A stretch of DNA of 63,637 nucleotides from Macrostomum lignano (taxonomy: Eukaryota). The DNA lies in NCBI GenBank assembly GCA_002269645.1, contig NIVC01004034.1, positions 1-63,637 of the forward strand, in the 5' to 3' direction. A program made the translations under genes and the position numbers. Of this stretch, positions 9,581 through 56,950 are shown in pieces; within the stretch, counting starts at the first letter, position 1, and every line of letters begins with the position of its first letter. The notes below the pieces were generated by a model. That model made no database searches. It was not told where the DNA came from and worked only from the letters and a program-made list of their open reading frames with translations.

Positions 9581-9760
9581 CTACTCACAGATAACTTCAG
9601 TCACAGAAGACACAACAAGGGCCATGGATAGACGCATCAAAAGCATTTGGGCCATCGCTTTCGCGTCCCATGCATATAACTGCACAACGATTGAAAATCT
9701 GTCGAACCACCTGGAGAAGTTGCTTCCAACCTCCAAGCGCTCGATTTCCATAGCACCTGC
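9581..9760 (-). mobile_element. Gag-like N-terminal fragment of an LTR element
   Basis: IERLEVGSNFSRWFDRFSIVVQLYAWDAKAMAQMLLMRL resembles Ty3/Gypsy gag N-termini. Confidence 0.4.
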
Positions 9761-32894: not shown

Positions 32895-34710
32895 GGAGGG
32901 ATTCAGACGGGGGGAGACTCAGACGGGAGGGGGGAGACTCAGACTGCAGGGGGGAGAGATTCTGACGGGAAGGGGAGACTCGGATAGGGGGAGACTCAGA
33001 TGGGAGGGGGAGATTCAGACGTAGGGGGATGAGACTCGGATGGGAGGGGGGAGACTCAGATGGGAGGGGGAGACTCAGACTGGAGGGGGGAGAGATTCAG
33101 ACGGGAAGGGGAGACTCAGATAGGGGGAGACTCAGACGGGAGGGGGAGACTCAGATGGGAGGCGGAGACTCAGACGGGAGGGGGGAGACTCAGATGGGAG
33201 GGGGGAGACTCAGATGGGAGGCGGAGACTCAGATGGGAGGGGGGAGACTCAGACTGGAGGGGGAGACTCAGATGGGAGGGGGAGACTCAGATGGGAGGGG
33301 GAGACTCAGACTGGAGGGGGGGGAGATTCAGACGTAGGGGGATGAGACTCGGATGGGAGGGGGGAGACTCAGATGGGAGGCGGAGACTCAGACGTAGGGG
33401 GATGAGACTCGGATGGGAGGGGGGAGACTCAGATGGGAGGGGGAGACTCAGATGGGAGGGGGAGACTCAGATGGGAGGGGGAGACTCAGACTGCAGGGGG
33501 GAGAGATTCAGACGGGAAGGGGAGACTCGGATAGGGGGAGACTCAGACTGGAGGGGGGGGGAGATTCAGACGGGAAGGGGAGACTCGGATAGGGGGAGAC
33601 TCAGACGGGAGGGGGAGACTCAGATGGGAGGGGGGAGACTCAGATGGGAGGCGGAGACTCACACGGGAGGGGGGAGACTCAGATGGGAGGGGGGAGACTC
33701 AGATGGGAGGCGGAGACTCAGATGGGAGGGGGAGACTCAGACTGGAGGGGGAGACTCAGATGGGAGGGGGAGACTCAGATGGGAGGGGGAGACTCAGACT
33801 GGAGGGGGGGGGAGATTCAGACGGGAAGGGGAGACTCGGATAGGGGGAGACTCAGACGGGAGGGGGAGACTCAGATGGGAGGGGGGAGACTCAGATGGGA
33901 GGCGGAGACTCAGATGGGAGGGGGGAGACTCAGACTGGAGGGGGAGACTCAGATGGGAGGGGGAGACTCAGATGGGAGGGGGAGACTCAGATGGGAGGGG
34001 GGAGACTCAGATGGGAGGCGGAGACTCAGATGGGAGGGGGGAGACTCAGATGGGAGGGGGAGACTCAGACTGGAGGGGGAAACTCAGACTGGAGGGGCAG
34101 ACTCAGATGGGAGGGGGGAGACTCAAACTGGAGGGGGAAACTCAGACTGGAGGGGGAGACTCAGACGGGAGGGGGAGACTCAGATGGGAGGCGGAGACTC
34201 AGATGGGAGGGGGGACACTCAGACTGGAGGGGGAGACTCAGATGGGAGGGGGAGACTCAGACTGGAGGGGGAGACTCAGACTGGAGGGGGAGACTCAGAC
34301 GGGAGGGGGAGACTCAGATGGGAGGGGGGAGACTCAGACTGGAGGGGGAGACTCAGATGGGAGGGGGGAGACTCAGACGGGAGGGGGAGACTCAGATGGG
34401 AGGGGGGAGACTCAGACGGGAGGGGGAGACTCAGATGAGGGGAGACTCAGATGGGAGGGGGAGACTCAGATGAGGGGAGACTCAGATGGGAGGGGGAGAC
34501 TCAGATGGGAGGGGGGAGACTCAGACTGGAGGGGGAGACTCAGATGGGAGGGGGGAGACTCAGACGGGAGGGGGAGACTCAGATGAGGGGAGACTCAGAT
34601 GGGAGGGGGAGACTCAGATGGGAGGGGGGAGACTCAGACTGGAGGGGGAGACTCAGATGGGAGGGAAGAGACTCAAATGAGGGGAGACTCAGATGGGAGG
34701 GGGAGACTCA
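32895..34710. repeat. G-rich ~19-21-bp minisatellite (ggggagactcagatgggagg), ~1.8 kb
   Basis: Tandem G-run units; source of spurious GGGDSD/RLRWEG ORFs. Confidence 0.95.
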
Positions 34711-36881
34711 AAACGCGGAGCTGGTGGGGTCGGAGCGGACGGCCCAGTCAGGAGCTCCCGGGGGCGGCCCCCGGTTGCTTTCAGCGCCGTCGAAACGCTG
34801 GCAGCGGGCGAGCTGGGCGCGCTGCTTGACGGTGGCGAAGCGGGCATAGAAGGTGTCATCCAGGCGGCGCTTGATGTCGGCGACGGCGGCGGATTCCCAC
34901 ACCAGGCTGCGCACCCGCAGATTCGCCTGCTCGTCCTCGGCCTCACCGCTGCCTGAGGCGGTCTCGTCTTCCTCGTCTGAGGAGGTGAAATCCCGGGACA
35001 GCACGGCGCGGAACTGGTTGAGCTCGTCTGGGGACAGGTGCGGCAGCAGAGACTCGAATGCCTTCTGGCGCCGGCCGAGCTTCTGCGATGCGATGGGGAT
35101 TGGCGATTCTCACTAGGTGTACGGGGCGATTCTCACTTGGTGTACGGGGCGATTCTCACTAGGTGTACGGGGCGATTCTCACTTGGTGTACGGGGCAATT
35201 CTCACTTGGTGTACGGGGCGATTCTCACTAGGTGTACGGGGCGATTCTCACTAGGTGTACGGGGCGATTCTCACTAGGTGTACGGGGCGATTCTCACTAG
35301 GTGTACGGGGCGATTCTCACTAGGTGTACGGGGCGATTCTCACTAGGTGTACGGGGCGATTCTTGCTAGGTGCACGGGCGATTCTCAATTGGTGTAGGGG
35401 GGGGGGGGCGATTTTTACTCAGTTAATGGGGGCTAATTCTGGCTAGCACCACGGTTACGGACACAAATGAGAATCTGTATTCCAAAAAGCCTCACCGCCT
35501 TCATCCGGTTGCAGCGGGCGGCAGTCCGCCTGTTGCACTGGACCCGCTTGCTCTCCCGCAGGTAGTACTGGTACAGCTCTGCGGGCGGCATTCCGGTTTG
35601 ACTATGACTGACTCGAGAGTCGCGCAAGCAATGCAGCAACAAAGACTGGCTAAAGACTCACTTTTCCAGGTGTCCTCGTCGGCCTCGATGCCAGATTCAT
35701 CCCTCACCAAGTCCAAGACGCTGCGAGCCGCGTCCTGATTGATCGAGTGCTCCCAGCTGAGGGCGGCAAGGGAAAGCGGCTTGCAGGGCTTGGGGAGGTG
35801 GCTGAGTGAGCACTGATTGAGTAGCCAACTAGGCGCGCACCCTACCTCTTGGAGAAGTCGAACAAGTGAGGACCGCTGCCTCGGAGCTTCTTGTAAGCAT
35901 CTTGCAGTATGTTCTGTGGGCAAATTTCTGCTTCTGCTTGATTTCATTCAACTGAAACTCTCAAACTAGAGTGCCCAGACACAGACTAGAGTGCTCAGAC
36001 ACTAATGAGTGCACAGACTAACGAGTGCCCAGACACAGACTACAGTGCTCAGACACTAACGAGTGCCCAGACAATGATTAGAGTGCTCAGACACTAACGA
36101 GTGCCCAGACAATGATTAGAGTGCTCAGACACTAACGAGTGCCCAGACAGACTACAGTGCTCAGACACTGAGTGCCCAGGCACAGACTAGAGTGCTCAGA
36201 CACTTAACGAGTGCCCAGGCACAGACTAGAGTGCTCAGACACTAACGAGTGCCCAGACACAGACTAGAGTGCTCAGACTAGCCAGGCCAGCAGGCTCACC
36301 CGAACGTTGCCGCTCCAGCAGTTGTTGGCAGAGCTGGAAAATTCTCCGCCGCTGCAGCTCAAGATTGATGGACAGCCGGCAGTTCGGTGCGCGGCAGACT
36401 CCGAATCGTCAACGAGCGCCGCTTCATCGTCAGCTGCCTCGTTGAAGTTGTCGGCGGAGTTGACTTGGTGGACGAGAATGCCGCAGCCGCCGCCGCCAGC
36501 CTCGCCGTTAGTGTCAGCCAAGCGAACCTTGGACTCGCGGAATTCTTCAGCAGAATGTTGCAGAGGCCGCTTCCGATCTGCTGGGATCTGCGGCTCAGAC
36601 TCCTGCGCAGACGGCTGCTGCACAGGCAGCGGCAGCGGCGCCGCCTCGGCCAGTCGGTGCTCGGCGCGGACGAGCCGGAGCTGCACATCGGCGGCCGAGG
36701 GCTGCATGATGTCCACCAGCTGCAGGTGCAGGTTGTTGATGAGGCGCAGCGCGGCGCACAGGTCGTCCAGAGTCATGCTGTCCAGCAGCATGCCCGCGTT
36801 CATCAGGGTGGACTCGAACAGGGTCAGCGTAGAGAAAGCCGGCTGCTGCTGCTGCTGGTGCTGAAGGACGGCGGCGGCCAT
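34708..36881 (-). CDS. C14orf93-like putative nuclear protein, gene B (single exon at the position of gene A's array)
   Basis: Phase-consistent exons 36881-36300 (ends phase 0), 35913-35846 (0 to 2), 35756-35662 (2 to 1), 35578-35496 (1 to 0) and 35082-34708. Reads ...DAYKKLRGSGPHLFDFSKSWEHSINQ...TWKKLYQYYLRESKR...KA|KLGRRQK...DFTSSDEE...VRSLVWES...IKRRLD...GPPPGAPDWA. Confidence 0.8.
35100..35395. repeat. 23-bp minisatellite (ggcgattctcactaggtgtacgg)
   Basis: Tandem periodicity in the last intron of gene B. Confidence 0.95.
35965..36280. repeat. ~38-bp dimeric minisatellite (actagagtgctcagacactaacgagtgcccagacacag)
   Basis: Alternating gagtgctcagac / gagtgcccagac half-units in intron 1 of gene B. 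Confidence 0.9.
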
Positions 36882-37389
36882 TGCTGGGCAAACTAGTCGG
36901 TCTGCTGCAAAAATGGTTTTCAACACAGCTGTGACTACAAATCCACACAATGCAAAAAATGCATCTAGTTCTACTGGCCTACTTTTACTCATGGGCATAT
37001 TGAGTGCGAATTACTGGCGGAATTTGCTAAGACGAGTCAGATTTGGTCATAGACAAAACCAACGAACCTCAGTGACTGAGCAGTTGGTCATAAAAACGAA
37101 CGAACCTCTGAGCAGTTTTGCATTGCTTAAACTGGCCATGAATCGGTTCTGGACTCTGACTGCTATCTAGGGATTAATAAGTAGTATTAAGCCTACTTAC
37201 TGCTGAGGAATTCAGCAACAAATTCATATTTTTGCTTTACTGTCAAGTCGGTGGTCACAGAGCAGAGCAGTGTGACCGGGTGAGTAAATACAGGTGCTAA
37301 GATGATAGACTGGCCGTATATTTGAGAACTGATTGAGAACACAACAGCACAGCATAGTCAATAGCAGAACAGTGACAGTAATGAAATAC

Positions 37390-37930
37390 ATAGCAGTAAT
37401 CATTTATAATAAGCAAAGACGAACATCAGCCGCCAGACAGGGCGGAAGCGAATTACAAAAGCGAAAATGCGCCCGGAGTCCGGGCGATCAAGCGGAACCC
37501 AAAGATTGCGGATGTGCCGGACAACCATTGGGGGAGAATTACAGTTGAACAATGGGAGGAAAATGCAAACAATTAGGGGGCTTGTGGCAGTGTTAAAAAG
37601 CAGTCAGTTCACAGCAATGAGCGACTTGACATTATACAATACTCGACTCGCGAATAGGGATTCGACCATACGGGGTGTGAGGGGCCCGGTTCTACTGCAG
37701 TGAAGGGCGAAGCACTCTCAATTTTGAGTTGGTCTCGTTAAATCAGTTTGCCAAAGGAGGGTTTGTCACAGTCAAGCTTGGCTGGGAGTAAATCCTCTGG
37801 ACAAACATCCAGACCAGTCAACCGATTTTCTAAATCCTGCCAGCGCAATTTAATGGGGAGAGCCGCCAATGGAATTTGTATGAGCTGGAGGAGCAGCGCC
37901 CCATCTTCAGTAGCCAGAAAATGAGAATAT
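37390..37930 (-). mobile_element. Possible degenerate 3' end of an L2/CR1-type LINE
   Basis: Scattered peptides TNSKLRVLR, SRVEYC and PAHPQSL...RFCNSLPP resemble ORF2 C-termini; heavily disrupted. Confidence 0.35.
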
Positions 37931-38222
37931 GATGAGGACATTAGAAGGGGGAATGAGGGGTTGGGGAAGTGAAGAGAGATGAGCAAATGAGGGGATAAGG
38001 AAAAAGGGATGGGGAAATGAAGAGCGATGGGGAAATAAGGGGATGGGGAAATGAAAAGATGGGGGATCAGGGGATGGAGAAAAAGAAGGATGGGAAATGA
38101 AATGGGGAAATAAGGGGATGGGGAAATAAGATGGGGAAATGAGGAGATGGGGAAGGTGGGAAAATACGGAGGGGTAGGGAAGGAGTCAAGTCAGTTCTCC
38201 GCAGTCCTTGGCGCCGTCTCAG

Positions 38223-41200
38223 TTATTGAGTGGCGCCGCCAGGCGGATGAGACGCCGTCCAGGCTGGGTCGCGCGCCCAGTCGAGCTGGTCGGCGGGAGG
38301 CGGGCGGCTGGACAGCACAGCTGGGTCCCGCTGCAGCCGCAAAACGTCCGCACGCTGCTTGTCGTCGGCGAGGCGTTCGAGGAAAACTTCGTCTAATCGA
38401 CGCTTCATCTCGCGCAGCTCGGCGCTCTCCCAAGGGAGGCTGCGCACCTTCATCTCAGAGTCCAAGTCGGCACCGCCTTCTTCATCCGAGCTGGTGTAGT
38501 CCCTGTTGAGCACGCTCTCGTATTTTGTCTGGGCGGTCTGGTCGAGGTTGGGCTTCAGGGCCTCGTAGCTCTTCTGGCGCCGGTTCAGCTTCTGCGGGGG
38601 GACCGGCGGGTCAGGATGGGATTCTCGGGCTGGACGAGATGGGATTCTGGGGCTGGATGAGATGGGATTCTCGGGCCGGATGAGATGGAATTCTGGGGCT
38701 GGATGAGATGGAATTCTCGGGCTGGACGAGATGGGATTCTCGGACTGGATGAGATGGGATTCTGGGGCTGATGGGATGGGGATTCTCAGGTAGGTGAGAT
38801 GGGATTCTCGGGGTGATGGGATGGAGTTTCTCAAATAGGTGAGATGGGATTCTCAGGGTGATGGGATGGGGATTCTCAGGTAGATGAGATGGGATGGGAT
38901 TCTCAGGTAGATGGGATGGGATTCTCGGGCTGGTGGGATGGGGATTTACTAAATTAGAAGCCAGTTACCAAGAGTTCTCGGCAGAACGCGGATAGAGCAG
39001 CCGGGAGAGTCGTACAATAGACTTACCCTCGGCAGTTCAAACAAGGAAAATAGCTTTAGCAGCAGACACAACTGAACCAGACAAATCAGGCTCTCACCCC
39101 TGCTCAGACAGTGCGAATGCTCACTGCTATTCATCACCACAACACAGCGCAAAGCCAAGTCCGCACTCACAGTTTGCACAAGAAAGATTGAGTTCAGCTT
39201 GCTCTGCTGCTGCTGCTGTTTAAAATCCCGCTTGAGATTCTTATTAAACCAGCTGCCAAGGTACTTGAATCCGGCCTCTATAAAGAATTGCTAACACAGA
39301 ATTAGCCTAGACAAGCGCAGTGAGAGCTGCCTTTCCGAGAGTTGCTGGGCCGATCAGCTCTAACAAACAAATCAGGAAACGCACTAACTGACCAGGCTAA
39401 TCCGAACAATGCTTCGAGTGTCCGACTGCCGCTTGTTGACCTTAAATGCGCACTGCAGATTCTTGCGATAATGCCCGCCAAAGTACTTTAGCGACTGGGC
39501 TGCAGGGGCGGGGAAGGAGTTTCTTAGCAGTGATTTTCTCAACCAAGTGCAAGGGGAAGCATTGCAGGCGCCCGAGCCCCAACTGGCAGGGGAGGCGCAA
39601 CTTACTATAAGACTGAGCACCGTGTGCCGACACTGCTGGCTGCGCTCTGAGCTGACATATTTAAACTTTAGGTACCTGCGATAGTAGGAGCTAAGGTAGG
39701 CGGAGCAGCCTCCTGCAACAACAGGCAGTTCAGGGTCAGTCAGCCCCCTAACAAACAATGGAGCAACAAAAATTGGCTGGGACGTTGCAGAGAGCCGGCG
39801 GCAGAATGGAGGGACACAGCCTGGTCTGCCAATGCCCGCTTCACTCAATATGCTATGCACATTGTTGATATCGATCGCCCCTCAAACCCTATCATTCCAG
39901 ACCCGTGCTGCTTACCCCACTCTCATCATCGCCTCCTATCCACAAAACCCGCCGAATTTTCCGAGCCCCTATTGCCCTGTCTAGAATCAAATGTACTATT
40001 ATCACACTCTGCCAGACACCAGCTGCTGAACTCTTCGCTTTACGAAGTGCCAGACATGCTCGATGGGGTTCGTGTCTGGAGACTTTGACGTTCCTGTCCC
40101 TGAAGCCGCACTTTGCGCAGCCTTCGCCCATTTCTCAATCACCGATGGAATGCAAAACTTTTGGCCCTTGTGGCAGCGTGAGTGGGGGGGGGGGTGGTTA
40201 GCTGTTGCTGAGTATGCATCTTGTGAGCCAGACACGGTAGGGTTTGGCTACACGGGGCGCAGACACGTACCCAGATTCGATGGAAGCTATTCTTTAGATA
40301 ATCCTGCCTATAATCGCGCCGCAATACGCAGCGGAAATAGCCCGAGTAGTAACTCAGCGCCCGCTCTGCAACAATACACATTATATGCATGGAATTGTGC
40401 ATCTTCAAAAACTCGCCAATCGGGCTAACGTAGCGGGCAGGTGCTGGGCGCTGATCAGCTGCGCACACCTACCAGGACGCGGTGGAACACTTTGTCGCAT
40501 ATGCGCTGCTGGTGCTGCACTTTATAATCTCGTTTGAGCACAGCGCTAAAGTACACTTTAAAGTATTTTTCGGCTACAACTGGAAGTGCAAAAACAATTG
40601 AATTGCGGAGCGGACACAGAAATTGCTGGGGATTCGCTGCGGGCATTCCAGGCCTGGGAGCAAGTGCTGGTCACCAAAAGCTAAGCCTTACTGAGCCCAG
40701 GTATTTGAAGCGATCCATCCGCTGCTGCAGCTGCGCCTGCTCAAGGAGCTTCTTGGCCGATGGCTTCAGCGTCCAAGAGAAATAGGTGCTCAGGTAGCTG
40801 TAGCAGAGCCCTGCAAAGCAGCCCGACCCCCCGAAGTGTTGCAGGGCTGCTACACAATTTCTACCCTAGACTGAGGTGCAAAGGGCGTTGCCAGGGGACA
40901 GGAGACGAGGTCGGCAGGCTGTAGGTCTTACCAAGCTGAAAAGGAATTGCCTCTTCCAGCGAGAGGCCATGTGCAGCTTCTTGACGCCGGGCTTCAGCGT
41001 GCAGCCGAAGTACACGGACATGTACCGGTTGCAGCCGCCTGAAACAGCGCCGGATGGCCAGCTGCGAGTCTCTGGTGATGAGTGCGAATTCCCCTGCCAG
41101 CTGAGCGAGAATTCCCCTGCCAGCTGAGCGAGAATTCCCCTGCCAGCAAAGCGAGAATTCCCCTGCCAGCTGAGCGAGAATTCCCCTGCCAGCAAAGCGA

Positions 41201-42973
41201 GAATTCCCCTGCCAGCTGAGCGAGAATCCCCCCGTTGCTTAGCGGAGGGTTTTTGGGAAGCGGCGACGCTGAATAGGCATTAATAAATTATGATAATTAG
41301 TTGATTAGGTTGTCATACAAGGAGAGCATTGGTGCAGCGGGGGCGGCCCCCGATACCCCCCGATTTGCAACGGGGCCGATTATTATTATTACTATAGTTA
41401 TATTTTAAAGCTCCACAGCGCGGCAGCTGCACGGCTCAGCCAATATCGCAGCATTTTTTTATTTCGGACCAATAACTTTAAATATTTGCACAACTCATCA
41501 GGCCCTGCAACGCCCTTTTTTGTAGTCTGTTTTATAGTGAAATTAAATTCGATAATGCACAGACAATCACATGCTAATATGCAATGAGACCGCTGGGGAG
41601 GCACACTTCAGGCCAATGTAGTGATCAATGGATCATTGGGCACAAGTGCAATAATAAAGGCATTTAATATTTGCAGTATGCATTATTCAAATAGTTTGAT
41701 TTTAATTCCAAATTTAGATAATCTCTTTATGGTGGCAATATACCGCCAACAGTGTGCCAACCCGCCGCTCCCAGATATAAGCGTACTACTAGCAGTAGCC
41801 TACACAGAATATGACAGGAAATGACTTGAAAGACCCACTTCTCCAGGCGGACAGGTTCGCGGGCTGGTATTGGCTGAGGCTGAGCGCTCGGTCGATCACG
41901 CGGTTGGCGGCCAGGACGTTGACGCGGGCGGAGTAGGGCAGGGAGAAGTCGAACACGTTGGTGCCAGTCTCGTCCTTCAGCACTCGGTAGGCCTTGCGCA
42001 GCGTGGCCTTCCAGTCGTTGGACAGCTCGCCGGAGTCGGACAGGTCGGAGCCGCCGCCGCCGCCGCCACCGCCGCCTGGGCCGAGACGGGGCAGCTTGGC
42101 GGGCGGGCTCTGGCCGAAGGCAGCGGCGCCAGCACCGGAGCCGTCGTACACCAGATCCGCCTCCATCAGGACGCAGTCGTCGTCGGAATCGGCGCCCGGC
42201 TCCGACTTGACACCGGAGAAGGACGGCTCCGGCTTGCCCAGCTTCGACGTGCCCGGAGCTCCGGCGGCAGCGGCAGCGGCAGCAGCGGCGGCCACACCGG
42301 CCAGGCCGCCAGAGCCGCTTGTTGATCGCGAGGCGGGCGGCGGGCACTGCGAGGGATGGCGAGGGAAGCCATGGGCTGGTTTCCTGCTGTTTGGGCCTGG
42401 GCGATTCCAAAGGGGTGGTGCAGGGGCAGAGGCGATTCCATAGGGGTGGTGCAGGGGCAGAGGCGATTCCAAAGGGGTGGTGCAGGGGCAGAGGCGATTC
42501 CAAAGGGGTGGTGCAGGGGCAGAGGCGATTCCATAGGGGTGGTGCAGGGGCAGAGGCGATTCCATAGGGGTGGTGCAGGGGCGATTCCATAGGGATAGTG
42601 CAGGGGCGATTCCATAAGGGTGGTGCAGGGGTGATTCCATAGGGGTGGATCACGGTCAGTATATCTTGGGCCAATCCCGAGGCGGTGGTCAAGGCGCAGT
42701 TTACAGGTGATCTATACTGCACTGGATTGAGCTTACCTGGCTGTGCTCATCAGCCACAGTAGCCAGCCGCTGCACAGTGGGGTCCAGCACCTCCAGCAGG
42801 TGGCCGTGCAGCTGGGCCACAATCTTGAACGCCATGAGCAGGTCTCGCACTGCCATGCTGTCAATGAGCATGGTGGCGCTGCTGATGGTGCACTCAAACA
42901 TGGTCAGCGGAGAGAAGCTGCCGCCGCCCTGGCCGCCGGCCGGGGTAGGCGGAAATCCCATAGCGATTGACAT
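38223..42973 (-). CDS. C14orf93-like putative nuclear protein, gene A, with a seven-exon mutually exclusive cassette array
   Basis: Constant exons 42973-42737 (ends phase 0), 42346-41839 (0 to 1; ends AWR a|gtgggt) and 38591-38223 (cgcag|KLNRRQK...DYTSSDEE...VRSLPWES...MKRRLD...SSRPPP...WA*). Only a phase 1-to-0 exon joins them in frame, and seven are present. Confidence 0.85.
38610..38945. repeat. ~23-bp minisatellite (gggctggatgagatgggattctc)
   Basis: Tandem units just upstream (- strand) of the terminal exon acceptor. Confidence 0.9.
39171..39277 (-). CDS. Gene A cassette exon V7 (107 nt)
   Basis: ctttatag|ag...act|gtgagt; (K)AGFKYLGSWFNKNLKRDFKQQQQQSKLNSIFLVQT. Confidence 0.8.
39393..39499 (-). 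CDS. Gene A cassette exon V6 (107 nt)
   Basis: cccctgcag|cc...ctg|gtcagt; (T)QSLKYFGGHYRKNLQCAFKVNKRQSDTRSIVRISL. Confidence 0.75.
39606..39712 (-). CDS. Gene A cassette exon V5 (107 nt)
   Basis: tgttgcag|ga...ata|gtaagt; (R)GCSAYLSSYYRRYLKFKYVSSERSQQCRHTVLSLI. Confidence 0.8.
40000..40150 (-). mobile_element. Tc1 transposase fragment inside the exon array
   Basis: SPDTNPIEHVWHFVKRRV matches the Tc1 SPDLNPIExxW motif. Confidence 0.7.
40271..40365 (-). CDS. Gene A cassette exon V4 (95 nt)
   Basis: tgttgcag|ag...tgg|gtacgt; (K)RALSYYSGYFRCVLRRDYRQDYLKNSFHRIW. Confidence 0.8.
40473..40579 (-). CDS. Gene A cassette exon V3 (107 nt)
   Basis: cacttccag|tt...ctg|gtaggt; (I)VAEKYFKVYFSAVLKRDYKVQHQQRICDKVFHRVL. 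Confidence 0.8.
40692..40810 (-). CDS. Gene A cassette exon V2 (119 nt)
   Basis: ctttgcag|gg...tca|gtaagg; (R)LCYSYLSTYFSWTLKPSAKKLLEQAQLQQRMDRFKYLGS. Confidence 0.8.
40932..41038 (-). CDS. Gene A cassette exon V1 (107 nt)
   Basis: tgtttcag|gc...ttg|gtaaga; (S)GCNRYMSVYFGCTLKPGVKKLHMASRWKRQFLFSL; very high GC3. Confidence 0.8.
41083..41232. repeat. 23-bp minisatellite (ctgagcgagaattcccctgccag)
   Basis: About 6 units in the intron preceding V1. Confidence 0.95.
42400..42650. repeat. 31-bp minisatellite (gattccataggggtggtgcaggggcagaggc)
   Basis: Tandem units in intron 1 of gene A. Confidence 0.95.
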
Positions 42974-46285: not shown

Positions 46286-48103
46286 TTAAAACCGAAAAGG
46301 ACGAGGTGGAGGTGCCGACTGTCCAAATCTGGAATTCGCCGGAGGCTGCAGCAGGCCCTGGTTGCTTACAGGCCTAGGAGTTCCAAAGGGTCTGATGCCT
46401 GGGCCGGCTGGCGCTGGATTGGCGTAGGGCTGGCCAAATTGCGGCCCGGGAGCAGAGCGGCCAGTCTGCTGTGAGTACTCCGGACCTCTGCTCATGTCGG
46501 ACCTATCAGCGCTGCCGGATTCAAACGAAGCATTGCGCCCGGGAACGTAGCCGCGGCCCACAGGTTGCATGGGTTCATCCATGCGCGGTCGTTTTATTTC
46601 GCCACCATGGGCGCTGTTCGAATCTAAGGAATTCCTTTTCCCAAAAGCAGCGTTCTGCTGTTGCTGCTGCTGTAGTTGAACGTCAGGTACGTTTCGTGAC
46701 TGACGCGGAAAAGTTGAATGCTGCTGGCCAATATTTGAAAAACCTGGAGCAGGCGCTCTTGAGGCTGGTGACGCAAAAGGGTTGCTTAGCTGCTGAGCAG
46801 ATCCAGCAATACCAATGGATGGCGTCGAACCGTATGGACGAACCTGCTTTTGCTGCTGGCCAGCTTGAGGCATGGACTGCTGCGGAGGATTGCTGGGAGT
46901 TGCAAAGCGAGGACCAGCTGACTGAGCAGGCGTGCTTGACTGAGGCTGAGTCGGTTTAGTGAAGTCGCTAGCAAACAAGCTCGGAATGTCTCCTTGCGAC
47001 CGATTTCCATGCCTAGCAGAGCCTCTTGCTGACGGACCAACTGATTTCTGATTCGATCCCGATCCAAAAGATGAGCTAGTGCTCTGTTTGGAATTTTGCA
47101 CATTGCCAGAAGCCTTGTTACCGGAGAAACTACCGGCTGGACTACCAGCAACATTCCTTTGCGTAGGAGTGGTTGAAGCACTCTTAGAGACAGGGGCATT
47201 CTTGTTTGCTGGACTAGCTTTGCTAGCCGAGCTGGGTGCGGCTGCAGAGCCAGACTGGGCCGCTTTGCTGCCAGCCGTTGCTGAGCTAGATGCGTCAGCA
47301 TTAGCTGCGTTGCTAGCTGCAGGTTGCTGCCCTTTGCCTAATAGCAGCGCCCCGCCAAGCAGCAAGTCCTTCTGCTTCATCCAGGGGAACATGCTGATAG
47401 GAATGAAAGTGGCGCCATCGTTCGCATCCCAGTACTTTTTGAAGTAAGAGTTGGCAATGCCAGAATTCAGTTCCCAAGAAACTGACAATGGTCGAGTTTT
47501 TGGAACGCCAGAAATAGCCTTGAATGCTTCAGATCGGCTCTTAAATGTTACTGCTGCTGTGTTTAAGAACGCCTTATAGTCGATGCGGGTCACTGTGCCA
47601 AATTCTTCTGCTCTCTCCTTCACCTTCTTTTCGCTCCAAAACTTTGGTATCTGCTTTATCATGATGGAGGTACTGCAAACAGCCACGTGACCATCTCTGG
47701 GCTTCGGGAGACCAAGCTCTTCAACGCTAGAGTCCCCAGACTTGCTTACGCCATTAGCTGCGTCTTTCGAAGCTGGGGTCCCCTGGGCGGTGGATGAACT
47801 TTGCTCGGCCTGCTTTGCTACTGGCTGCTTAGAGGACGAATCACTAGATGACTGTTGCTGTGATTGACTCTTAGCGTCAGGGGCGGTGGTTTCAGGCTTC
47901 TCAGCAGCTGTCGCTGAGGTGTCTTCACTACTAGCTTGGGCCATTTGAGCCCCCATCTGTCTAAAGGCATACTCATTCACGGTGCTAAAAAACTGATTAA
48001 CTTCTTTTAAGCCTGTAACTAAGGCATCGCCCTTAGATGACTTAATGCACTCAAGAACCTGGCTCAGAAGAGTTGGGATTTTTGTCGAATTGTCCGCTGC
48101 CAT
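46286..48103 (-). CDS. Intronless SCAF4/SCAF8-type RRM protein lacking a recognisable CID domain
   Basis: 605-aa ORF. STSIMIKQI...EEFGTV...AAVTF...EAFKAI...SVSWELNSGI...KKYWDANDGATFIP matches the SCAF4/8 RRM and its WD..G.T.IP extension; low-complexity S/Q/P tail; tttcag acceptor 4 nt before the ATG. Confidence 0.8.
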   Translation of the reverse strand: MAADNSTKIPTLLSQVLECIKSSKGDALVTGLKEVNQFFSTVNEYAFRQMGAQMAQASSEDTSATAAEKPETTAPDAKSQSQQQSSSDSSSKQPVAKQAEQSSSTAQGTPASKDAANGVSKSGDSSVEELGLPKPRDGHVAVCSTSIMIKQIPKFWSEKKVKERAEEFGTVTRIDYKAFLNTAAVTFKSRSEAFKAISGVPKTRPLSVSWELNSGIANSYFKKYWDANDGATFIPISMFPWMKQKDLLLGGALLLGKGQQPAASNAANADASSSATAGSKAAQSGSAAAPSSASKASPANKNAPVSKSASTTPTQRNVAGSPAGSFSGNKASGNVQNSKQSTSSSFGSGSNQKSVGPSARGSARHGNRSQGDIPSLFASDFTKPTQPQSSTPAQSAGPRFATPSNPPQQSMPQAGQQQKQVRPYGSTPSIGIAGSAQQLSNPFASPASRAPAPGFSNIGQQHSTFPRQSRNVPDVQLQQQQQQNAAFGKRNSLDSNSAHGGEIKRPRMDEPMQPVGRGYVPGRNASFESGSADRSDMSRGPEYSQQTGRSAPGPQFGQPYANPAPAGPGIRPFGTPRPVSNQGLLQPPANSRFGQSAPPPRPFRF

Positions 48104-49199
48104 GGGCTGAAATAAAGCAAGAAGGAAAAACTACTTTACTAAACTACTAACACATTATTTTAAACCCACTCCAGACCTAATGGATTACAATGATGCTTGC
48201 AATAGAATACAAATAAATTTCATAGACTAACTTCCTGGCCAATGAAAACAAAAGAAAATTAACTATAAAATTACACCCTTTCTTTCCAAATTTATTGCTG
48301 CATCTCAAGTTGAAGGCTTCAGTTTTTTGTAGGAAGGCAATCTAAATTTGAAAGAAAAAACTATATGCTTAATCATCTATTCGGGTCTCTTACAATCTTA
48401 GCCTCTCAAAGTAAGAAATTTCATCACCAATGATTACACTTTTAACAAGAGATTGGGGAATTAATGCAAGTTATTTCAACCCTATGTACTTTATAAAGCA
48501 ATCATACACTTTTGTAACTTAAAGTATATTTTTTCAAGATTCATTAATTTTTAGAAGATAGATTTTTAGTATATAGAGGTACATTTTACTTTTTGCTTTT
48601 GCTTTATAACCCTTAGATTGTGCATATTTGGGCATATTATAAAGGCTTGTCAATTTTTGCATGTAAAACAGACATAACCAAATGATGTCTCATTTAGAAG
48701 AGCATATCTCTCCAAACAAAACTATTTTTAAGTCTAATAAATGCTTCCAATCACTGCAATGCTGCTGAAATGAGTTCCACTAGCTGTGACAATCTGAAAC
48801 ACTATTAGAAGCTTGGCTTTATAGAATTTATGTAGCTTATGTAGTTTAGACCTTGGCTGCAATAGTGCTCTACAAGACAATACAATTGACTATTAATTTA
48901 TTGTCACTTTTCAAACTTTAATTTATAAATAAATAAGCTGTAAGACATACAGATTTTGAACTTGTGGAATTCCAATCCCTGGAAGTATTTTAGCATACAT
49001 TCTTAAATTTGAAGTCTTACTCAAACAAAAACTTATTAATAAAGTTAGGATAAGGTTTGAAAAAATAATGAATTTGTGCTAAAATAAAAATTTTAGGCAA
49101 GCATTGATCTTATCAGCTGGGATACCACATAGAATGAGTCTCTAAATGTGTCTATCTAAAGCAAATGTTGGCAAACTCTGGCTTTTGACTCTTTCTGTC

Positions 49200-49650
49200 T
49201 ATCTAGTTCTTTGAAACTTCTCTTCTCTCTCCTTTGTTTTCTTATCTCATCTATCATGTTGCCTTTTTTCTCTTCTTTCTTCTTTTCTCTCTTATCCTTC
49301 CTTTTTTATCTCATCTCAGAAGAGGTCATCTTTGCCTTTTCCTATCTACTCATTTTTCCCTCTCCTTTCTTCTCTCTTTTTCTTCTTTCTTTTCTTCCCT
49401 CTTCTTATATATATATATATTCCTTTATCTCCCTTCACTTTTATCTCTATTCTCATTTTTTTCTCTTTTCTCCTCTCTTCCCTCTCGTATCTTACCTTAT
49501 CTCTTCTCTTATCTCATCTCTCTCATCTTGCTTCTCCTCTCCCCTTCTTCTCCCTCCCTTTCTCTCATTGTCCTCACCCCCTTATTTCTCTTATCTTCTC
49601 TCTCTCTTTGAATCATCTATTCTTTTTTCTTTCTGTTCATCTATTTTTTA
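49200..49650. repeat. CT-rich low-complexity tract
   Basis: Polypyrimidine run; source of spurious F/S/L ORFs. Confidence 0.9.
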
Positions 49651-50899
49651 GCCATGAGCTAGATTCTTTAACTGGCCTTTGAGGTAAAAGTCTGCCTATC
49701 TCTGGTTGGAAAGCCAGTTTGTAGGACCTAGTACTCTCATGGTTGTTTTCATACTTTGATTATGTCATCTTTCTTGCCAATTTTTCTTGCCTTGAAAGGA
49801 ATTTGTGTATTTTCAGCTCCACTGCAGTCTGCATCAGTCTAACAAACAAGGAAATGCACATTTCTTAAGAGGCCATTCAAGTTTTTAAGTACCTTTAAGA
49901 GAAACTTAAAATTTCCATGGTATGACTAATTTAATAGGGTGGTATTGCATTGCATTGCCTTTTTATAAATATTTTGCTTTTACAAACCATGCTAAATTTC
50001 CTTGATTTGCAAAGTTTAATTGCTGCGGAGTTTACCTATAGAAGGCAATGGTTAGATTTTTCTCACTAAATAATTATGGCTCAATAGCCTCTCCATGAGG
50101 TGCATAGGCTATAAATAAAGTTATTCTAGAACATTCTACATTTGATATATATATTCAGCACTATGGCCTAACCCTTGGTCTGGCTTTAGGGGAATAAGTG
50201 GATGGCACAAACAACAGAAAAAGCAGACTAACTTAAAATGCTTATAGTTTCTATTCTGATTGAGTTACAAAGTTGAAACTTTACATTTAGACAAAGAATG
50301 TCAATGAAAAATTGTGAAGTTTGAAGTCTATTCTTTTATATGGAGCAAACTTGTAGCAGCCAAAAGTTAGCCAATTTTACAACCTTTTTTATACACCTAG
50401 GCCTAGATTGGAAAAGAGGCAAGTGGGCAAAGGTTGGGATGGTAGCTTTGCTAACAAAAAACAGCTAAGTTTTTGCACTACTAGGTAGGAAGACTTAATT
50501 TAGGAAATTTTACTAGCTATTTAGCCCCTTTCTAGGTGGCTTTTTAGCATTTAAGCATTGGTCTATAAGCAGTTTTATATAGTTGCTAAACAAATGACAC
50601 TAATCTCCAAGCAGTTCTGCAATAGCAAATCTTTAAGCAATTTATACTGAGACTAAAAAAATCTTAGAGGTATATTTTCAATGTTTATAACTTTGAAATG
50701 TAAATTAATTTATAGTTGTCTTATTGTTATTGATATTCTTTGTATAAGTTAGTCTAATTATGTATTATTATTAGTATTAAATTATTAGTTTTATGTATTA
50801 TATTACATTTTGCAATAATTGACAATAAACCTAGCACAAGGATTACTATTAGAGTTGCTTTACTCTCCCCAGTTTAGTACCACTGCTATCCTGATTAGT

Positions 50900-51190
50900 A
50901 CCACTCCTTCAGATAAGCTCTACTCCTTTAGATTAGCTCCATTCCTTCAGATGAGTTCTATTCCCCTAGATTAGCTCCACTTTTTTGGATTAGCTCTATT
51001 CCTTTAGATTAGTTCCACTCTTTCATATTAGTTCCACCCCTTCAGATTATTTCCACCCCCAGATTAGCTCCACTCCTTTAGATTAGCTCCACTCCTTTAG
51101 ATTAGCTCCACTCCTTTAGATTAGCTCTACTCCTTTAGATTAGCTCCACTCCTTTAGATTAGCTCCACTTTTTCAAATTAGCTCTATTCC
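50900..51190. repeat. 19-bp minisatellite (agattagctccactccttt)
   Basis: Tandem periodicity, degenerate at the edges. Confidence 0.9.
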
Positions 51191-54100
51191 CAAACTGCCA
51201 TTAGGCTATTATTATTGCCTCAGAAGTTGAAATTAACCAACCCTCAATTTGCAATTATCCCCACTGCAGCCTAAAATTATCCCCTTTAATCCCCTATAAT
51301 AGACTATAAACATACTCTTAGAAGCCTGCAATCATCTTCTTTTTAGTCTACAACTTTCATTAGCATTAAGTCTTTATCCCCTTAGTGGCCTAGAATTGTT
51401 CCTACAGCAAACTAAAAAATTTGTTTTGTAGTTGGCAGTTATCCTCCTAACTTGCATTTAATCCTCTATAGTTAAAAAATCCTTCAAAACTCTATAGTTA
51501 TTTATCCTCCACAGAAGTCTACCATTATCCTTTAAGTAGTCTGCAGTTACCTTTCCTCTAGCAGTTTGTAGCAATATATTCATAAATCTGGAAGTAGTCT
51601 CATTTATCTTTTTAGCAATCTGCTTAGCAGCAATTTCCTATAACATAGCATTTAGCAATGCCTTCAGCAGTTTAGCAGCAATTTTATACTTTCATAGAGC
51701 TAGGCAATACCCATTGATGTGATCAGTAATAATTAAGGTAGTTTTTTACAAATATAATTTTGCTTAGCAACTTGTGGCAATTAGCCAAAATAATTCATAA
51801 ACTCTGCTTAGCTAATTAATCAAAAAATGTTTCAGTTGGTTGAGGCATGAATAAATTCAATTTTAATTATCTACTAGAGTCAGGACTTGAACCTGGAACA
51901 TTTTGCTTAGCCTAATGCCTATAGTGCAGCTACTCTGCCTATTGATGGGAAGGAGATAAAATCAGCCATATATGCTTTGGCACTGCAATAAAATACATAA
52001 CAGTGATAGGCTGTTCAGTGTGCAAACAGAGCCAATGTACAGTTGCGTGAAATCTATAAATAGCTAAGAATTATCAATGTAGTCCATCAATTAATCAGGG
52101 TTAGAATATACACACAGCCACTGAGCATTATTTACCCTTGCACATGGCAGCTAGTTTTGAGGCCTATACTACATAGTAAAAAGAAAAGTTATGGCACAAT
52201 CTCAATTGGGATTGAATTCAGTCAGTCAAGATTTTGACCTTTTCTAGCTGCCTATTGAAAGCATTGGGAAAATTCATTTTTCAAATATTTAACCAAATAT
52301 TTATATTTATATTTAAAATATTTAAAATATCTTCCCATTTAGATTTTTCAATGCAATTTGATCTACACAATTTCATAGGAATTTGCAATTAAATAAAGCA
52401 AGTTTAAAAAAATTGGTTTAGGCATTCAGGCTATAGACTGAAATACTAGTCAGACAGACATAGCTTAGAGATTTAGTATATTGATGAATGATGATGAAGG
52501 TAGCCTATAACACATTCTGTGGTGAATTTAGAATGGATACAAAATTTGGTTGAACAGTTTGAGAGTCTATAGCAAAGTAATTTCTACATAGATAGACAGA
52601 CAGTAAACATGGATTTTTAGTTTTTTTAGGTATAGATAGATTAATATATTTCTAATTCTTTAAAGAGAGCCTAAAAATGCCTAACATGAGGCAAAGTATA
52701 TTGCTTATTAGAAGATGTTAATGCTTGCATTTTTACTACGCTTTAAGTAAATATAAATACAAAAGTTATAATAAACCTAAACTCTAAAATAAAAAAGTAT
52801 TAGCTATTAAATTTCATTTTAAGCTACACTAAAAAAACAACTAAGATATTTACAATTTAGAATAGGATAGGATTTAGACTAAGGAAGTCTAGAGTAGGGA
52901 GAAATGAAAAACTTTGGTGAGTTTATCTTATTTTTTGAAAACATTTCTTCAAGATAAACAGTATAAAGCTTTAAAATATTATATAAATATACATATTTTT
53001 ACTTTTAAAACTTATATACTAAGTATCAAATATAATAAATTATGAATATAAAAATATAGAAATAACTTAATTCATGAACCAAAATATATATATTTTTACA
53101 AGCTGTTGAAACCCGCTGATTTTGAACCCGGGGAACTCTATTCCCCAGAATTATTTTTTGCATGTATTCTAAAATCTGAGGTCAAACTCAAACAAAAACT
53201 TGTTTATAGTTAGGACAGAGTTAAACATAAAATAGAGTACATTCGTGTAAAATTAGGATTTGAGGCAAACATTTGTATTGTTGGCTGGAGTGCTGCATAG
53301 AATGTCAGGCAAACTTTAGTCTCTGCCTCTCCCTGTCCCTTGGATCCTTTGGAGCCCACGGGCAGAGGTTAGGGTGGCTATTTTTACAAACTGGCTGCAG
53401 CCCTAGTCAGAGTGGCCAAAGAAGATTGTTGTGGGTTAAAAAAAGCAGTTTTCTGCTTTTTTAGGGATGTTAAAATGTGAAAATTAAAAATTAAAATAGC
53501 CTAAAGCCTGCTCCGGAAAATTTGCAGTTTTCCCATATAAGTTTTGATGCTGACTTGGCAGAATTGTAGGAGTTCACTTGCTACATACATACAGACAGAC
53601 AAACATCGCGTCAGTTTTAGTATTAGGAGAGTTGAAATATTTGATAATTAATTTGGCTTTTTTAAAATATATAGTCAAATTTGATTTATTCAAAATTTAT
53701 TTCATTTTATTTCATTTAAAAATTTCAAATTTCAAGATTGCAATTACAAAGAATCTAGCAAATAGTTATCTAATAATTGTTAGGCCTATTATTTTATTAG
53801 ATTTACTTTTTTCAATATAAGTATATAGTTCTTGGTTTGCTTTGCCATTAGAAAAAGCCTAGGTTAGTTATAATAAAACTAAAATAAAATTGGTGGTTAT
53901 CTAATTTATCTTGCTTTTAATATAGTATAGGGCTTATTATATTATATGTTATAAGTTATATTATATTATATTATAATTATAGTGATGAATATAGAGATAT
54001 CAATAGACAGCAAAGAAATTTATTTTATTTTTAATAACACAATCAATATTTATAACATCATTATATAATCATAATTAGAATTACTTTACTATATATATTT

Positions 54101-55929: not shown

Positions 55930-56950
55930 GTCAGAGAACTCAGCGTCTCTTAGAAGCAGCCAGGTCTAGCAGTCGTTGAGTTCCTTAAGCTGAGAGCTAG
56001 ACAGCTTGTGCAGCGCTTGGTTTGTCCGCGTACGCTAGGACGGAGAGTCGCTTCTCGGGGTGTCGTCTGCAATTTTCTACGACGTCCAGAGCAAAAATCC
56101 GTTGGGAGTTGTCAGGGAGGCCAGTGTGCAGTACCAGTCCCAGGACCAAGGACGAACAGAAATGAATGGGGCCAAGTAGGTATCCCCTTGGATAACGCGC
56201 TGAAAGACGTGTCGAAAAAGTCGGAATTAGGCCATCCAACTGCCGCCTTAGTCGATCCTGGTACAGAGCGATCATCTCACAGCCGTCACCAGATGTTCAG
56301 GTACACTGTACGTGATACACGCGGAGGATATTCGCCCCTCCTCGACACTGAGTCAAAGGCCTTCGACAGGAAGTCCACAAAGATGCAGATGATGGTCGAC
56401 TGGTGGATCCAGCGGGTCCGCGGGTCCAGCACCGGCTGCAGCCGCTACAGCAGAACCCTGTTCAACAACTTGCGTGAGCCGTGCAGGACATCAGTTATAG
56501 TGAGATCCTGAGATACTCTTCGATCTTGACGGAGCCTGGTTTCTTTGGGATCCCGACGATATGCGCAGTCCGCTCCCAGCTAGCACGCAGTTCATCACGA
56601 TCGCGTGACTCCCAACGCGACCTTCTGCGGGAAGCGCAGCACCTAGACGAACACATTTTCGGGCCCAGTAGCCTTGTTGTCTGGCGTCTTCTTTGTAAGT
56701 TGGAACACCGATCGTCGATGGTGATGGGGCTGGTGTTAAAAGAGCTGTCCTCTGCATATCAGCGCAGCCTCTCCATGGGCAATGACATATCGTCCCTTTG
56801 CGGCCGCGGAGGTACGTTGACGATACCAGAGGAAGAAGGTCCGCAGCTCGTTTCGCCTCTTCGTGCGCGGGCACCCGCCAGGTTCAGAGCTGAGGACATG
56901 CAGGGAAAACAGGGTGGGAACAGGAACAGAGAGCAAAAAAAGGTGAGCTG
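55930..56950 (-). mobile_element. Degenerate RTE-like LINE reverse transcriptase
   Basis: TAHIVGIPKKPG, KLLNRVLL.RLQPVLDP, IFVDF(L)SKAFDSVSR and RRHPEKRLSVLAYAD, with frameshifts and stops. Confidence 0.8.

What the first reader, a model, noticed from the sequence alone, without database searches (positions are those of the whole stretch)
34708..36881. Adjacent paralogue B keeps a single exon where gene A has the array
Gene B shares the N-terminal motif, the FDFS...W segment and the terminal exon with gene A. It has one 83-nt phase 1-to-0 exon (35578-35496, KLYQYYLRESKRVQCNRRTAARCNRMKA) flanked by the same intron positions. This independently supports the splice model and suggests the array expanded after the gene duplication. 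B also has two extra introns in a region that is one exon in A.
Basis: seen in the sequence. Interest (0 to 1): 0.7.

Follow-up and report, generated by a model that had tools for sequence, protein, structure and literature searches.

The report
Single-cassette paralogue beside an exon array
Gene B is a real, expressed flatworm (Macrostomum lignano) gene that carries one copy of an exon that its neighbour gene A holds as seven alternative copies; B keeps the ancient five-exon layout of an uncharacterised animal gene family, and it most likely once had a second alternative copy that it lost.

Summary
The window is a whole 63,637-bp contig of Macrostomum lignano. This is identical to the RNA-seq-derived GenBank model PAA48861.1.

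The 83-nt phase 1-to-0 exon sits between the same two introns as cassettes V1-V7 of gene A.

- B's two "extra" introns are ancestral, not gained. Brachiopod and starfish homologues have all four B introns at the same alignment columns and phases, plus one 110-nt exon. Gene A lost two introns.
- A and B are not recent duplicates. They belong to separate, well-supported clades, and A-then-B tandem pairs occur at four or more loci.
- A's array does post-date its split from the single-cassette gene D.
- B's clade also has arrays (B2 has 3 cassettes, B3 has 6 or more). B's cassette belongs to one class (beta). Paralogue B1 keeps another class (alpha), and B3 has both. B therefore most probably lost a cassette (about 0.7).
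- Profile comparison finds no direct similarity between B exon 4 and V1-V7. The homology is positional, through the ancestral exon.

The protein family has no Pfam domain, and its confidently predicted fold has no neighbour in the PDB.

The parts
36300..36881 (-). Gene B exon 1 (CDS, 582 nt, phase 0-0). It encodes the N-terminal helical motif FSTLTLFESTLMNAGMLLDSM... followed by an acidic, low-complexity linker.
   Evidence: Identical to PAA48861.1. The AlphaFold2 model has helices at residues 25-86.
36882..36906 (-). Short 5' leader of B. It is preceded by a polypyrimidine-CAG acceptor (tttttgcag|ca...) about 23 nt upstream of the ATG. This is probably a spliced-leader trans-splice site.
   Evidence: Sequence. 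The annotated partial ORF starts right after this AG (DRLVCPAM...). The trans-splicing reading is an inference.
35914..36299 (-). Intron 1 of B (phase 0). It is ancestral and is filled by a 38-nt minisatellite (35965-36278).
   Evidence: The same intron column (666) occurs in Lingula and, in the raw exon mapping, in Patiria.
35846..35913 (-). Gene B exon 2 (68 nt, phase 0-2): NILQDAYKKLRGSGPHLFDFSK.
35757..35845 (-). Intron 2 of B (phase 2, inside FDFSK|S). It is ancestral and has been lost in the A clade.
   Evidence: Column 699/700 is shared by B, B1, B2, C1-C3, D, Lingula and Patiria.
35662..35756 (-). Gene B exon 3 (95 nt, phase 2-1): (S)WEHSINQDAARSVLDLVRDESGIEADEDTWK.
35579..35661 (-). 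Intron 3 of B (83 nt, phase 1). It has no room for, and shows no trace of, a further cassette.
35496..35578 (-). Gene B exon 4, the single cassette (83 nt, phase 1-0). It encodes (K)LYQYYLRESKRVQCNRRTAARCNRMKA and belongs to class beta of the B clade.
   Evidence: Class assignment: Smith-Waterman z = 8.2 to B2_13089 and 7.8-8.1 to three B3 cassettes. It lies inside a 47-residue helix with pLDDT 85-98.
35083..35495 (-). Intron 4 of B (phase 0). It consists mostly of a 23-nt minisatellite (35102-35401, 13 copies).
34708..35082 (-). Gene B exon 5 (375 nt including the TGA stop). It encodes the conserved C-terminal domain KLGRRQKAFE...TSSDEE...RVRSLVWES...PDWA. An alternative acceptor lies 3 nt downstream at 35079.
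33000..34710 (.). A 19-nt minisatellite of about 89 copies that abuts B's stop codon and must form the start of the 3' UTR or flank.
38223..42973 (-). Gene A, given as context. Exons: 42973-42737 and 42346-41839. Cassettes: V1 41038-40932, V2 40810-40692, V3 40579-40473, V4 40365-40271, V5 39712-39606, V6 39499-39393, V7 39277-39171. Last exon: 38591-38223.
   Evidence: The RNA-based model P0011 equals exons 1-2 plus V7 plus the last exon.

Best explanation
Gene B (BOX15_Mlig000817g3) is an intact, transcribed member of an uncharacterised bilaterian protein family that has multiplied in Macrostomum lignano.

Gene structure. B's five-exon structure is the ancestral one for the family. Exon 4 is the descendant of an ancient 110-nt, phase 1-to-0 exon. 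That exon encodes the end of one helix and the start of the following basic helix in the conserved C-terminal domain. In B it reads as one continuous 47-residue helix that runs into the invariant KLxRRQK motif.

Arrays. In several Macrostomum paralogue lineages this exon was tandemly duplicated into arrays. One cassette per mRNA is then required by frame arithmetic: every cassette has length 2 mod 3, so inclusion of 0 or 2 cassettes gives a premature stop. Gene A's seven-cassette array arose in the A lineage after it split from the single-cassette gene D and before the A-type paralogues diverged.

B's history. B belongs to a different clade whose ancestor already had at least two cassette classes, alpha and beta. 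B retains only beta and lost alpha. Its paralogue B1 retains only alpha, and B3 still has both. In B, exon 4 is therefore a constitutive exon. Skipping it would shift the frame (stop at codon 295).

Shown versus inferred. Shown: the exon structure, RNA support, conserved intron positions, arrays in paralogues and cassette classes. Inferred: the loss of alpha in B, mutual exclusivity enforced by frame and mRNA surveillance, and any biochemical role of the basic helix.
For: - Exon model and identity to the GenBank and UniProt proteins.
- The annotation is RNA-seq derived: PMC5730564.
- A second genomic copy has the same structure.
- Family membership: a profile search finds 524 proteins with E <= 1e-3, including Patiria, Branchiostoma, Lingula, Glandiceps, Ptychodera, Apostichopus, Owenia, Lineus and Potamilus, all 'uncharacterized'.
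- Intron conservation: B, B1, B2 and Lingula share columns 666 (phase 0), 699 (phase 2), 738 (phase 1) and 779 (phase 0). Patiria has the same layout with a 110-nt exon, as does Lingula. Neither outgroup has extra cassettes.
- D and E each have one 110-nt cassette.
- Arrays in paralogues: the scan gave 104 sense-strand candidates with Smith-Waterman score >= 35 against 1 on the reverse-strand decoy.
- Cassette classes by shuffle z-score: B to B2_13089 8.2; B1 to B3_9396 12.3; alpha versus beta about 0.
- Rooted tree: B clade 100%, (B1,(B,(B2,B3))) at 67%/96%; A clade 100%; D sister to A at 98%.
- RNA-based isoforms that use different single cassettes: P0014/P0018, P0013/P0020, P0005/P0010.
- Frame arithmetic.
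- Helix location.
Against: - The branch that places B1 outside (B,B2,B3) has only 48-67% bootstrap support in neighbour-joining trees. If B is the earliest branch instead, B could be primitively single.
- The A tree and the B tree are not fully congruent for the tandem pairs (A with A4, but B2 with B3). Pairs therefore did not always duplicate as units, or conversion occurred.
- Cassettes are 26-40 aa long, so class assignments rest on short alignments.
- Cassettes other than those in annotated models have no RNA evidence in hand.
- No direct sequence similarity links B exon 4 with V1-V7.
- No read-level junction counts were available.
Confidence: 0.7

Rival explanations
1. One reading: B preserves the primitive one-exon state and never had an array. 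Arrays such as A's (and those of B2 and B3) all expanded after the duplications that separated them from B.
For: - The ancestral state of the family is one exon (Lingula and Patiria; D and E).
- A-type cassettes share a clade-specific length (107 nt) and a clade-specific motif.
- B's cassette is about equally similar to all beta cassettes of B2 and B3, as expected if beta diversified after B branched off.
- The branching order within the B clade is weakly supported (48-67%).
Against: - Alpha (B1, B3_9396; z = 12.3) and beta (B, B2_13089, four B3 cassettes; z = 5-8) are mutually dissimilar (z about 0), yet both are present in B3.
- With B1 as the outgroup, which is also the position of its tandem partner A1 in the A tree (97%), alpha must have been present in B's ancestor.
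Confidence: 0.22
2. One ancient array: the exon was amplified once, before the Macrostomum paralogues diverged. Every single-cassette gene (B, B1, D, E) is a reduction, and clade-specific cassette features reflect divergence or concerted evolution.
For: Arrays occur in at least four clades: A; B2/B3; C1; and C2 with its neighbour on L006. A single origin needs fewer gains.
Against: - The A-type and B-type cassette profiles show no similarity.
- Each clade has its own cassette length (107, 86, 95-110 or 77 nt) and its own C-terminal motif.
- D and E keep the exact ancestral length of 110 nt, as Lingula and Patiria do.
- Cassettes within an array are too diverged for ongoing homogenisation.
Confidence: 0.06
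3. Artefact or pseudogene: B's single cassette results from an assembly collapse in the repeat-rich intron 4, or B is a decaying copy.
For: Intron 4 is mostly a 23-nt minisatellite whose copy number differs between the two genomic copies. The assembly is known to be redundant (PMC5730564).
Against: - Two independently assembled copies show the same exon set with exons 99-100% identical.
- The ORF is intact, all family-invariant residues are present, and transcript-derived models exist for both copies.
Confidence: 0.02

Closest known systems
Dscam exon clusters in arthropods versus the single-exon DSCAM/Dscam-like paralogues (PMC1397879)
   Same: One gene carries a tandem array of same-phase, same-size alternative exons of which one is used per mRNA. 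A paralogue has a single constitutive exon at the homologous position. Arrays grow by tandem exon duplication after lineage splits.
   Different: Here the protein is a small, probably intracellular protein of unknown function with a basic helix, not an Ig-domain receptor. Arrays are small (3-8 cassettes). The same exon appears to have been amplified separately in several paralogues of one genome. No conserved docking/selector RNA pairing was found.
Subfunctionalisation of splice forms after gene duplication (PMC4417111), and loss of duplicated exon 5a/5b in some SCN-alpha paralogues (PMC12772994)
   Same: Paralogues derived from an alternatively spliced ancestor each keep a different alternative exon. 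B keeps beta, B1 keeps alpha, and B3 keeps both.
   Different: The ancestral state is inferred from short cassettes and a moderately supported tree. Expression and function of the isoforms are untested.
Uncharacterised bilaterian proteins such as Lingula anatina XP_013412708.1, Patiria miniata XP_038047259.1 and Branchiostoma lanceolatum CAH1250442.1
   Same: They share the C-terminal domain (profile E-values 1e-12 to 1e-19 for these three proteins; invariant N, W, SS-D/E, W-E-S and P-x-W-A motifs). Lingula and Patiria also share the four intron positions and phases.
   Different: Outside Macrostomum the N-terminus is a coiled coil rather than the FSxLTLFE motif. The cassette-equivalent exon is 110 nt and single in the two outgroup genes examined.
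bZIP basic region
   Same: A long, arginine/lysine-rich helix. B's NRRTAARCNRMK superficially recalls the N-x7-R basic motif.
   Different: There is no Pfam bZIP match at E <= 1. By my own reading, the spacing of the conserved N, AA and C/S-R positions is off by one. No leucine zipper follows. It is not a member.

Membership tests
Cluster of mutually exclusive, tandemly duplicated exons | Two or more adjacent exons with the same phase and size class at one position in the gene | tested here: not met
   B has one such exon (35578-35496). No other candidate or relic lies in introns 3 and 4. The same holds in the second genomic copy. The feature is met by gene A (7 cassettes) and by paralogues B2, B3, C1 and C2.
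Cluster of mutually exclusive, tandemly duplicated exons | Sequence similarity between the exons of the cluster and the candidate homologous exon | tested here: not met
   B exon 4 against V1-V7: pairwise z between -1.2 and 0.8. hhalign against the 25-sequence A-type profile gives probability 0.3%. Only weak in-register matches of each type to the ancestral exon profile remain (P = 0.009 and 0.004). Homology is positional: same introns and phases.
Cluster of mutually exclusive, tandemly duplicated exons | Exactly one exon of the cluster is present per mature mRNA | tested here: inconclusive
   RNA-derived models carry one cassette each: A with V7 (P0011), A1 with the first (P0014) or last (P0018) cassette, and B3 with 9396-9481 (P0005) or 9612-9696 (P0010). 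Inclusion of 0 or 2 cassettes shifts the frame. No read-level or long-read data were available.
Uncharacterised bilaterian family (Lingula XP_013412708 / Patiria XP_038047259 type) | Significant profile match over the C-terminal domain, including the invariant motifs | tested here: met
   Profile search: 524 proteins with E <= 1e-3 and 128 with E <= 1e-10 across at least seven phyla. Invariant or near-invariant N229, K282, R286, S315/S316, W343, S383, R385, P388 and W394 are present in B.
Uncharacterised bilaterian family (Lingula XP_013412708 / Patiria XP_038047259 type) | Shared intron positions and phases | tested here: met
   All four B introns coincide in column and phase with those of Lingula. 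Patiria shows the same layout, including a 110-nt phase 1-0 exon.
bZIP transcription factors | Match to the bZIP basic-region/leucine-zipper profile | tested here: not met
   No bZIP family was reported by Pfam at E <= 1 for A or B, nor for nine distant homologues at E <= 0.1.
Subfunctionalised splice forms among paralogues | Paralogues each retain a different alternative exon of a multi-exon ancestor | tested here: inconclusive
   B has beta only, B1 has alpha only, and B3 has alpha plus beta. The polarity depends on a branch with 48-67% bootstrap support. No expression data were examined.

The most novel reading that the evidence does not exclude
One ancient 110-nt exon of an unstudied bilaterian protein, whose confidently predicted fold has no PDB neighbour, has been amplified independently into mutually exclusive exon arrays in at least three or four paralogue lineages of a single flatworm genome. 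The cassettes were then partitioned among daughter genes (B keeps beta, B1 keeps alpha). The family would then be a natural birth-and-death series of exon arrays that diversifies one basic helical hairpin, perhaps a binding surface.
Probability: 0.45. Interest if true: 0.65.

Novelty: new member of a known kind. Interest (0 to 1): 0.45.

Why it matters
Taken alone, gene B is an ordinary five-exon gene that is already annotated as a hypothetical protein. Its value is as a reference point.

B shows that the two introns flanking the array in A are ancient: they are shared with a brachiopod and a starfish. It also shows that the array slot corresponds to a single 110-nt exon in other animals.

Together with its paralogues, B documents gain, divergence and loss of alternative cassettes within one gene family. 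Such series are rare outside arthropod Dscam and a few ion-channel genes, and I found none described for flatworms.

M. lignano can be made transgenic and is amenable to RNAi. Single-cassette genes (B, B1, D, E) and array genes (A, B3) could therefore be compared experimentally to ask what the variable helix does.

Tried and rejected
- Pfam on A and B and on nine distant homologues: no family found; only sub-threshold coiled-coil noise.
- PDB by sequence profile: nothing below E = 0.24.
- Foldseek with the B model (pLDDT 72.7) and with a compact homologue (pLDDT 95.4, pTM 0.80) against PDB and BFVD: best E = 0.68, 1.4 and 0.98. No neighbour.
- bZIP idea for the basic helix: rejected.
- Docking/selector RNA pairing: the 23-nt minisatellite upstream of V1 is about 70-76% complementary to the minisatellite downstream of V7, and a 14-nt element after V5 is 93% complementary to it. 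No such pairing flanks the arrays of A2, A4, B2, B3 or C2, and the hits for A3 and C1 are short and non-significant. I treat it as incidental.
- Relic cassettes in B: tblastn with 16 cassette peptides found only exon 4. One weak alpha-like match at 37462-37430 (E = 0.004 before correction for 16 queries) lies upstream of B's ATG without splice sites, and I judge it to be chance.
- dN/dS between the two B copies: too few differences, since the exons are 99-100% identical.
- Literature searches for mutually exclusive exons in Macrostomum or flatworms found nothing on this family.
Full report
**What the window is.** The spliced product of the proposed gene B is 99% identical to GenBank BOX15_Mlig034464g4 of Macrostomum lignano. 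It is identical over all 400 residues to PAA48861.1 (BOX15_Mlig000817g3), which lies on a contig of exactly 63,637 bp, the length of the window. The window is therefore a whole contig of the Mlig_3_7 assembly of this free-living flatworm. A second copy of the locus, 94-99% identical, lies on NIVC01000020.1 (locus L009). This fits the known redundancy of that assembly (PMC5730564).

**Check of the observation.**
- On the minus strand there is an ATG at 36881 and five exons: 36881-36300, 35913-35846, 35756-35662, 35578-35496 and 35082-34708. All have AG/GT borders. They give a 1203-nt ORF.
- The GenBank models derive from a genome-guided RNA-seq transcriptome, not from ab initio prediction (PMC5730564). 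The junctions therefore have RNA support.
- The model for the sister copy (P0001) uses an AG 3 nt downstream at the last exon (cagAAG) and lacks the otherwise invariant K. This is a NAGNAG site, and both acceptors are represented.
- tblastn of B against the window recovers gene A at 42973-38223. A has exons 42973-42737 and 42346-41839, seven cassettes V1-V7, and a last exon 38591-38223.
- The cassettes measure 107, 119, 107, 95, 107, 107 and 107 nt. All have length 2 mod 3 and all are open in phase 1.
- The RNA-based model P0011 is exons 1-2 plus V7 plus the last exon.

**The family and the ancestral gene structure.**
- Neither A nor B has a Pfam domain.
- A profile of ten M. lignano members finds 524 proteins with E <= 1e-3.
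- The named hits are all 'uncharacterized'. They come from a starfish, a sea cucumber, amphioxus, hemichordates, a brachiopod, an annelid, a nemertean and a mussel.
- I fetched the genes of Lingula XP_013412708 and Patiria XP_038047259 and mapped their exons. In a 44-sequence alignment, the four introns of B and of Lingula fall on the same columns with the same phases: 666 phase 0, 699 phase 2, 738 phase 1 and 779 phase 0. Patiria has the same layout.
- In both outgroups the exon between the last two introns is 110 nt, phase 1-to-0. No second copy lies in the flanking introns.
- B therefore has the ancestral bilaterian architecture.
- Gene A lacks the introns at columns 666 and 699, and it has an A-type intron (DEHSQ|CPPP, column 386) that D, B and the outgroups lack.

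**Arrays elsewhere in the family.** I fetched nine paralogous loci.
- A-type followed by B-type genes in tandem occur in the window and L009, in L001, in L002 and in L008, where D, A4 and B4 lie in a row.
- I scanned the interval between the phase-1 donor and the last exon. The criteria were AG...GT segments, length 2 mod 3, open in phase 1, and a Smith-Waterman score against annotated cassettes.
- The scan gave 104 sense-strand candidates with score >= 35 against 1 on the reverse-strand decoy.
- Cassette counts per gene: A 7; A2 at least 6; A3 at least 7; A4 at least 4; B2 3; B3 at least 6 (86 nt each); C1 about 5; C2 4 (77 nt); its neighbour on L006 4 (77 nt). B, B1, D and E have one each.
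- Transcript-derived or database models use different single cassettes of the same gene: P0014 versus P0018, P0013 versus P0020, and P0005 versus P0010.
- P0010 uses an 85-nt exon of B3 spliced directly to the last exon, which gives the frameshifted end ...GKQS*.

**Phylogeny and polarity.**
- In an outgroup-rooted neighbour-joining tree of the non-cassette parts, the A clade has 100% support, with D as its sister (98%). The B clade also has 100% support and groups with C1 and P23, not with A (unrooted version).
- A and B are therefore old paralogues, not a recent pair.
- D keeps one 110-nt cassette that carries the A-type motif.
- Cassette classes and their order are shared among A, A1, A2 and A4: TLKP-type first, V7-type last.
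- A's array therefore expanded after the D/A split and before the A-type genes diverged.
- Within the B clade the picture differs. By shuffle z-scores, B's cassette groups with B2_13089 (8.2) and with B3_9846, B3_10892 and B3_12733 (7.8-8.1). I call this class beta.
- B1's cassette groups with B3_9396 (12.3). I call this class alpha. Alpha and beta are unrelated by this measure (z about 0).
- The tree is (B1,(B,(B2,B3))) with 67% and 96% support. B1's tandem partner A1 is likewise outside (A2,A,A4), at 97%.
- On that topology alpha was present in B's ancestor, and B lost it. B1 either never had beta or lost it.
- The key branch is only moderately supported, so I put this at about 0.7.

**Direct similarity of B exon 4 to V1-V7.**
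- None is detectable. Pairwise z-scores lie between -1.2 and 0.8. hhalign of the 25-sequence A-type profile against B exon 4, or against the 12-sequence B-type profile, aligns one column at probability 0.3%.
- A profile of the 37-residue equivalent segment from 29 non-Macrostomum proteins matches the A-type profile weakly on the Y-F motif (P = 0.009). It matches the B-type profile over ten in-register columns, LYQYYLRESK against CKxYFxSLKD (P = 0.004).
- Homology of B exon 4 and the V cassettes therefore rests on position, phase and descent from the same ancestral exon, not on direct similarity.

**How it works.**
- Every cassette has length 2 mod 3 and lies between a phase-1 and a phase-0 intron. 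One cassette (or four, or seven) keeps the frame.
- Skipping B exon 4 gives a stop at codon 295. In A, zero or two adjacent cassettes give stops at codons 285-312.
- B's exon 4 is therefore obligatory and constitutive. In the array genes the frame rule, probably together with mRNA surveillance, would remove wrong products. That last step is inferred.
- I looked for competing RNA pairings. Inverted minisatellites flank A's array, but nothing comparable flanks the arrays of the paralogues, so I do not rely on them.
- AlphaFold2 with a 44-sequence alignment places B's cassette inside a 47-residue helix (residues 250-296, pLDDT 85-98) that continues into KLGRRQKAF.
- In a compact homologue (pLDDT 95.4, pTM 0.80) the equivalent exon spans the end of one helix, a glycine turn and the start of a basic helix.
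- No neighbour was found in the PDB or BFVD, nor by sequence profile. The biochemical function remains open. A basic helix that is swapped between isoforms suggests a variable binding surface, but that is speculation.

**Verdict.** The interpretation needs three corrections: the introns are ancestral, A and B are deep paralogues, and B is probably a reduced rather than an unexpanded gene. As a single finding it is a new member of a known kind, namely a constitutive paralogue of a gene with mutually exclusive exons. The wider pattern, repeated amplification of one ancient exon in a family with an unknown fold, is the more interesting lead.

Noticed in passing
window 1-63637: The window is a complete contig of the M. 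lignano Mlig_3_7 assembly. PAA48861.1 lies on a contig of exactly 63,637 bp. A copy of the A-B locus, 94-99% identical, exists on NIVC01000020.1, with differing minisatellite copy numbers.
   Followed up: yes
window 35079-35084 (minus strand): There is a NAGNAG acceptor (cagAAG) at B's last exon. The window's own model keeps the invariant K of KLxRRQK. The model of the sister copy uses the distal AG and lacks it.
   Followed up: partly
window 36882-36910 (minus strand): A polypyrimidine-CAG acceptor lies about 23 nt upstream of B's ATG, and the annotated partial ORF begins just after it. In the sister copy, A and B are genes g3 and g4 of one transcriptional unit (Mlig034464). This suggests a polycistronic precursor resolved by spliced-leader trans-splicing.
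   Followed up: partly
window 38615-38942, 41079-41232, 42400-42648, 35102-35401: Intronic minisatellites of 23-31 nt in A and B share a core (GAGAATC/GGAATCGCC). The one upstream of V1 is in inverted orientation and is 70-76% complementary to the one downstream of V7. A 14-nt element after V5 (39580-39593) is 93% complementary to it. No comparable pairing was seen around the arrays of the paralogues.
   Followed up: partly
window 33000-34710: A 1.7-kb array of a 19-nt repeat (about 89 copies) starts at B's stop codon, so B's 3' UTR must begin inside a minisatellite. A similar repeat (37947-38154) follows A's stop.
   Followed up: no
window 40020-40163 (minus strand): A remnant of a Tc1/mariner-type transposase (…SPDTNPIEHVWHFVKRRV…; Pfam DDE_3, E = 3.5e-4, below the gathering score) sits in the enlarged V4-V5 intron of gene A.
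   Followed up: partly
L003 9612-9696 (paralogue B3): The RNA-derived model P0010 uses an 85-nt cassette-like exon (one nt short of the 86-nt class) spliced to the last exon. The result is a frameshift and the end ...GKQS*. It is either a 'poison' cassette or a 1-nt assembly error in an A-run.
   Followed up: partly
L010 6388-6497 (Lingula), L011 8377-8486 (Patiria): The cassette-equivalent exon is exactly 110 nt, phase 1-to-0, in a brachiopod and a starfish, and also in M. lignano genes D and E. This is an unusually stable small exon in an unstudied family.
   Followed up: yes
protein family (model mb8b8427724e0 of P0061): The C-terminal domain is predicted with very high confidence (pLDDT 95.4, pTM 0.80), yet it has no Foldseek neighbour in PDB or BFVD and no Pfam entry. 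It is a candidate for a new domain family.
   Followed up: partly
window 48001-56000: An AT-rich block (GC 0.29-0.34) contrasts with GC of 0.51-0.61 across the A-B gene region (34-44 kb). It was not examined.
   Followed up: no
window 37430-37462 (minus strand): A weak peptide match (AFVIRFRPVWR) to the alpha cassette of B1 lies in the A-B intergenic region. It has no splice sites and E = 0.004 before correction for 16 queries. I judge it to be chance.
   Followed up: partly
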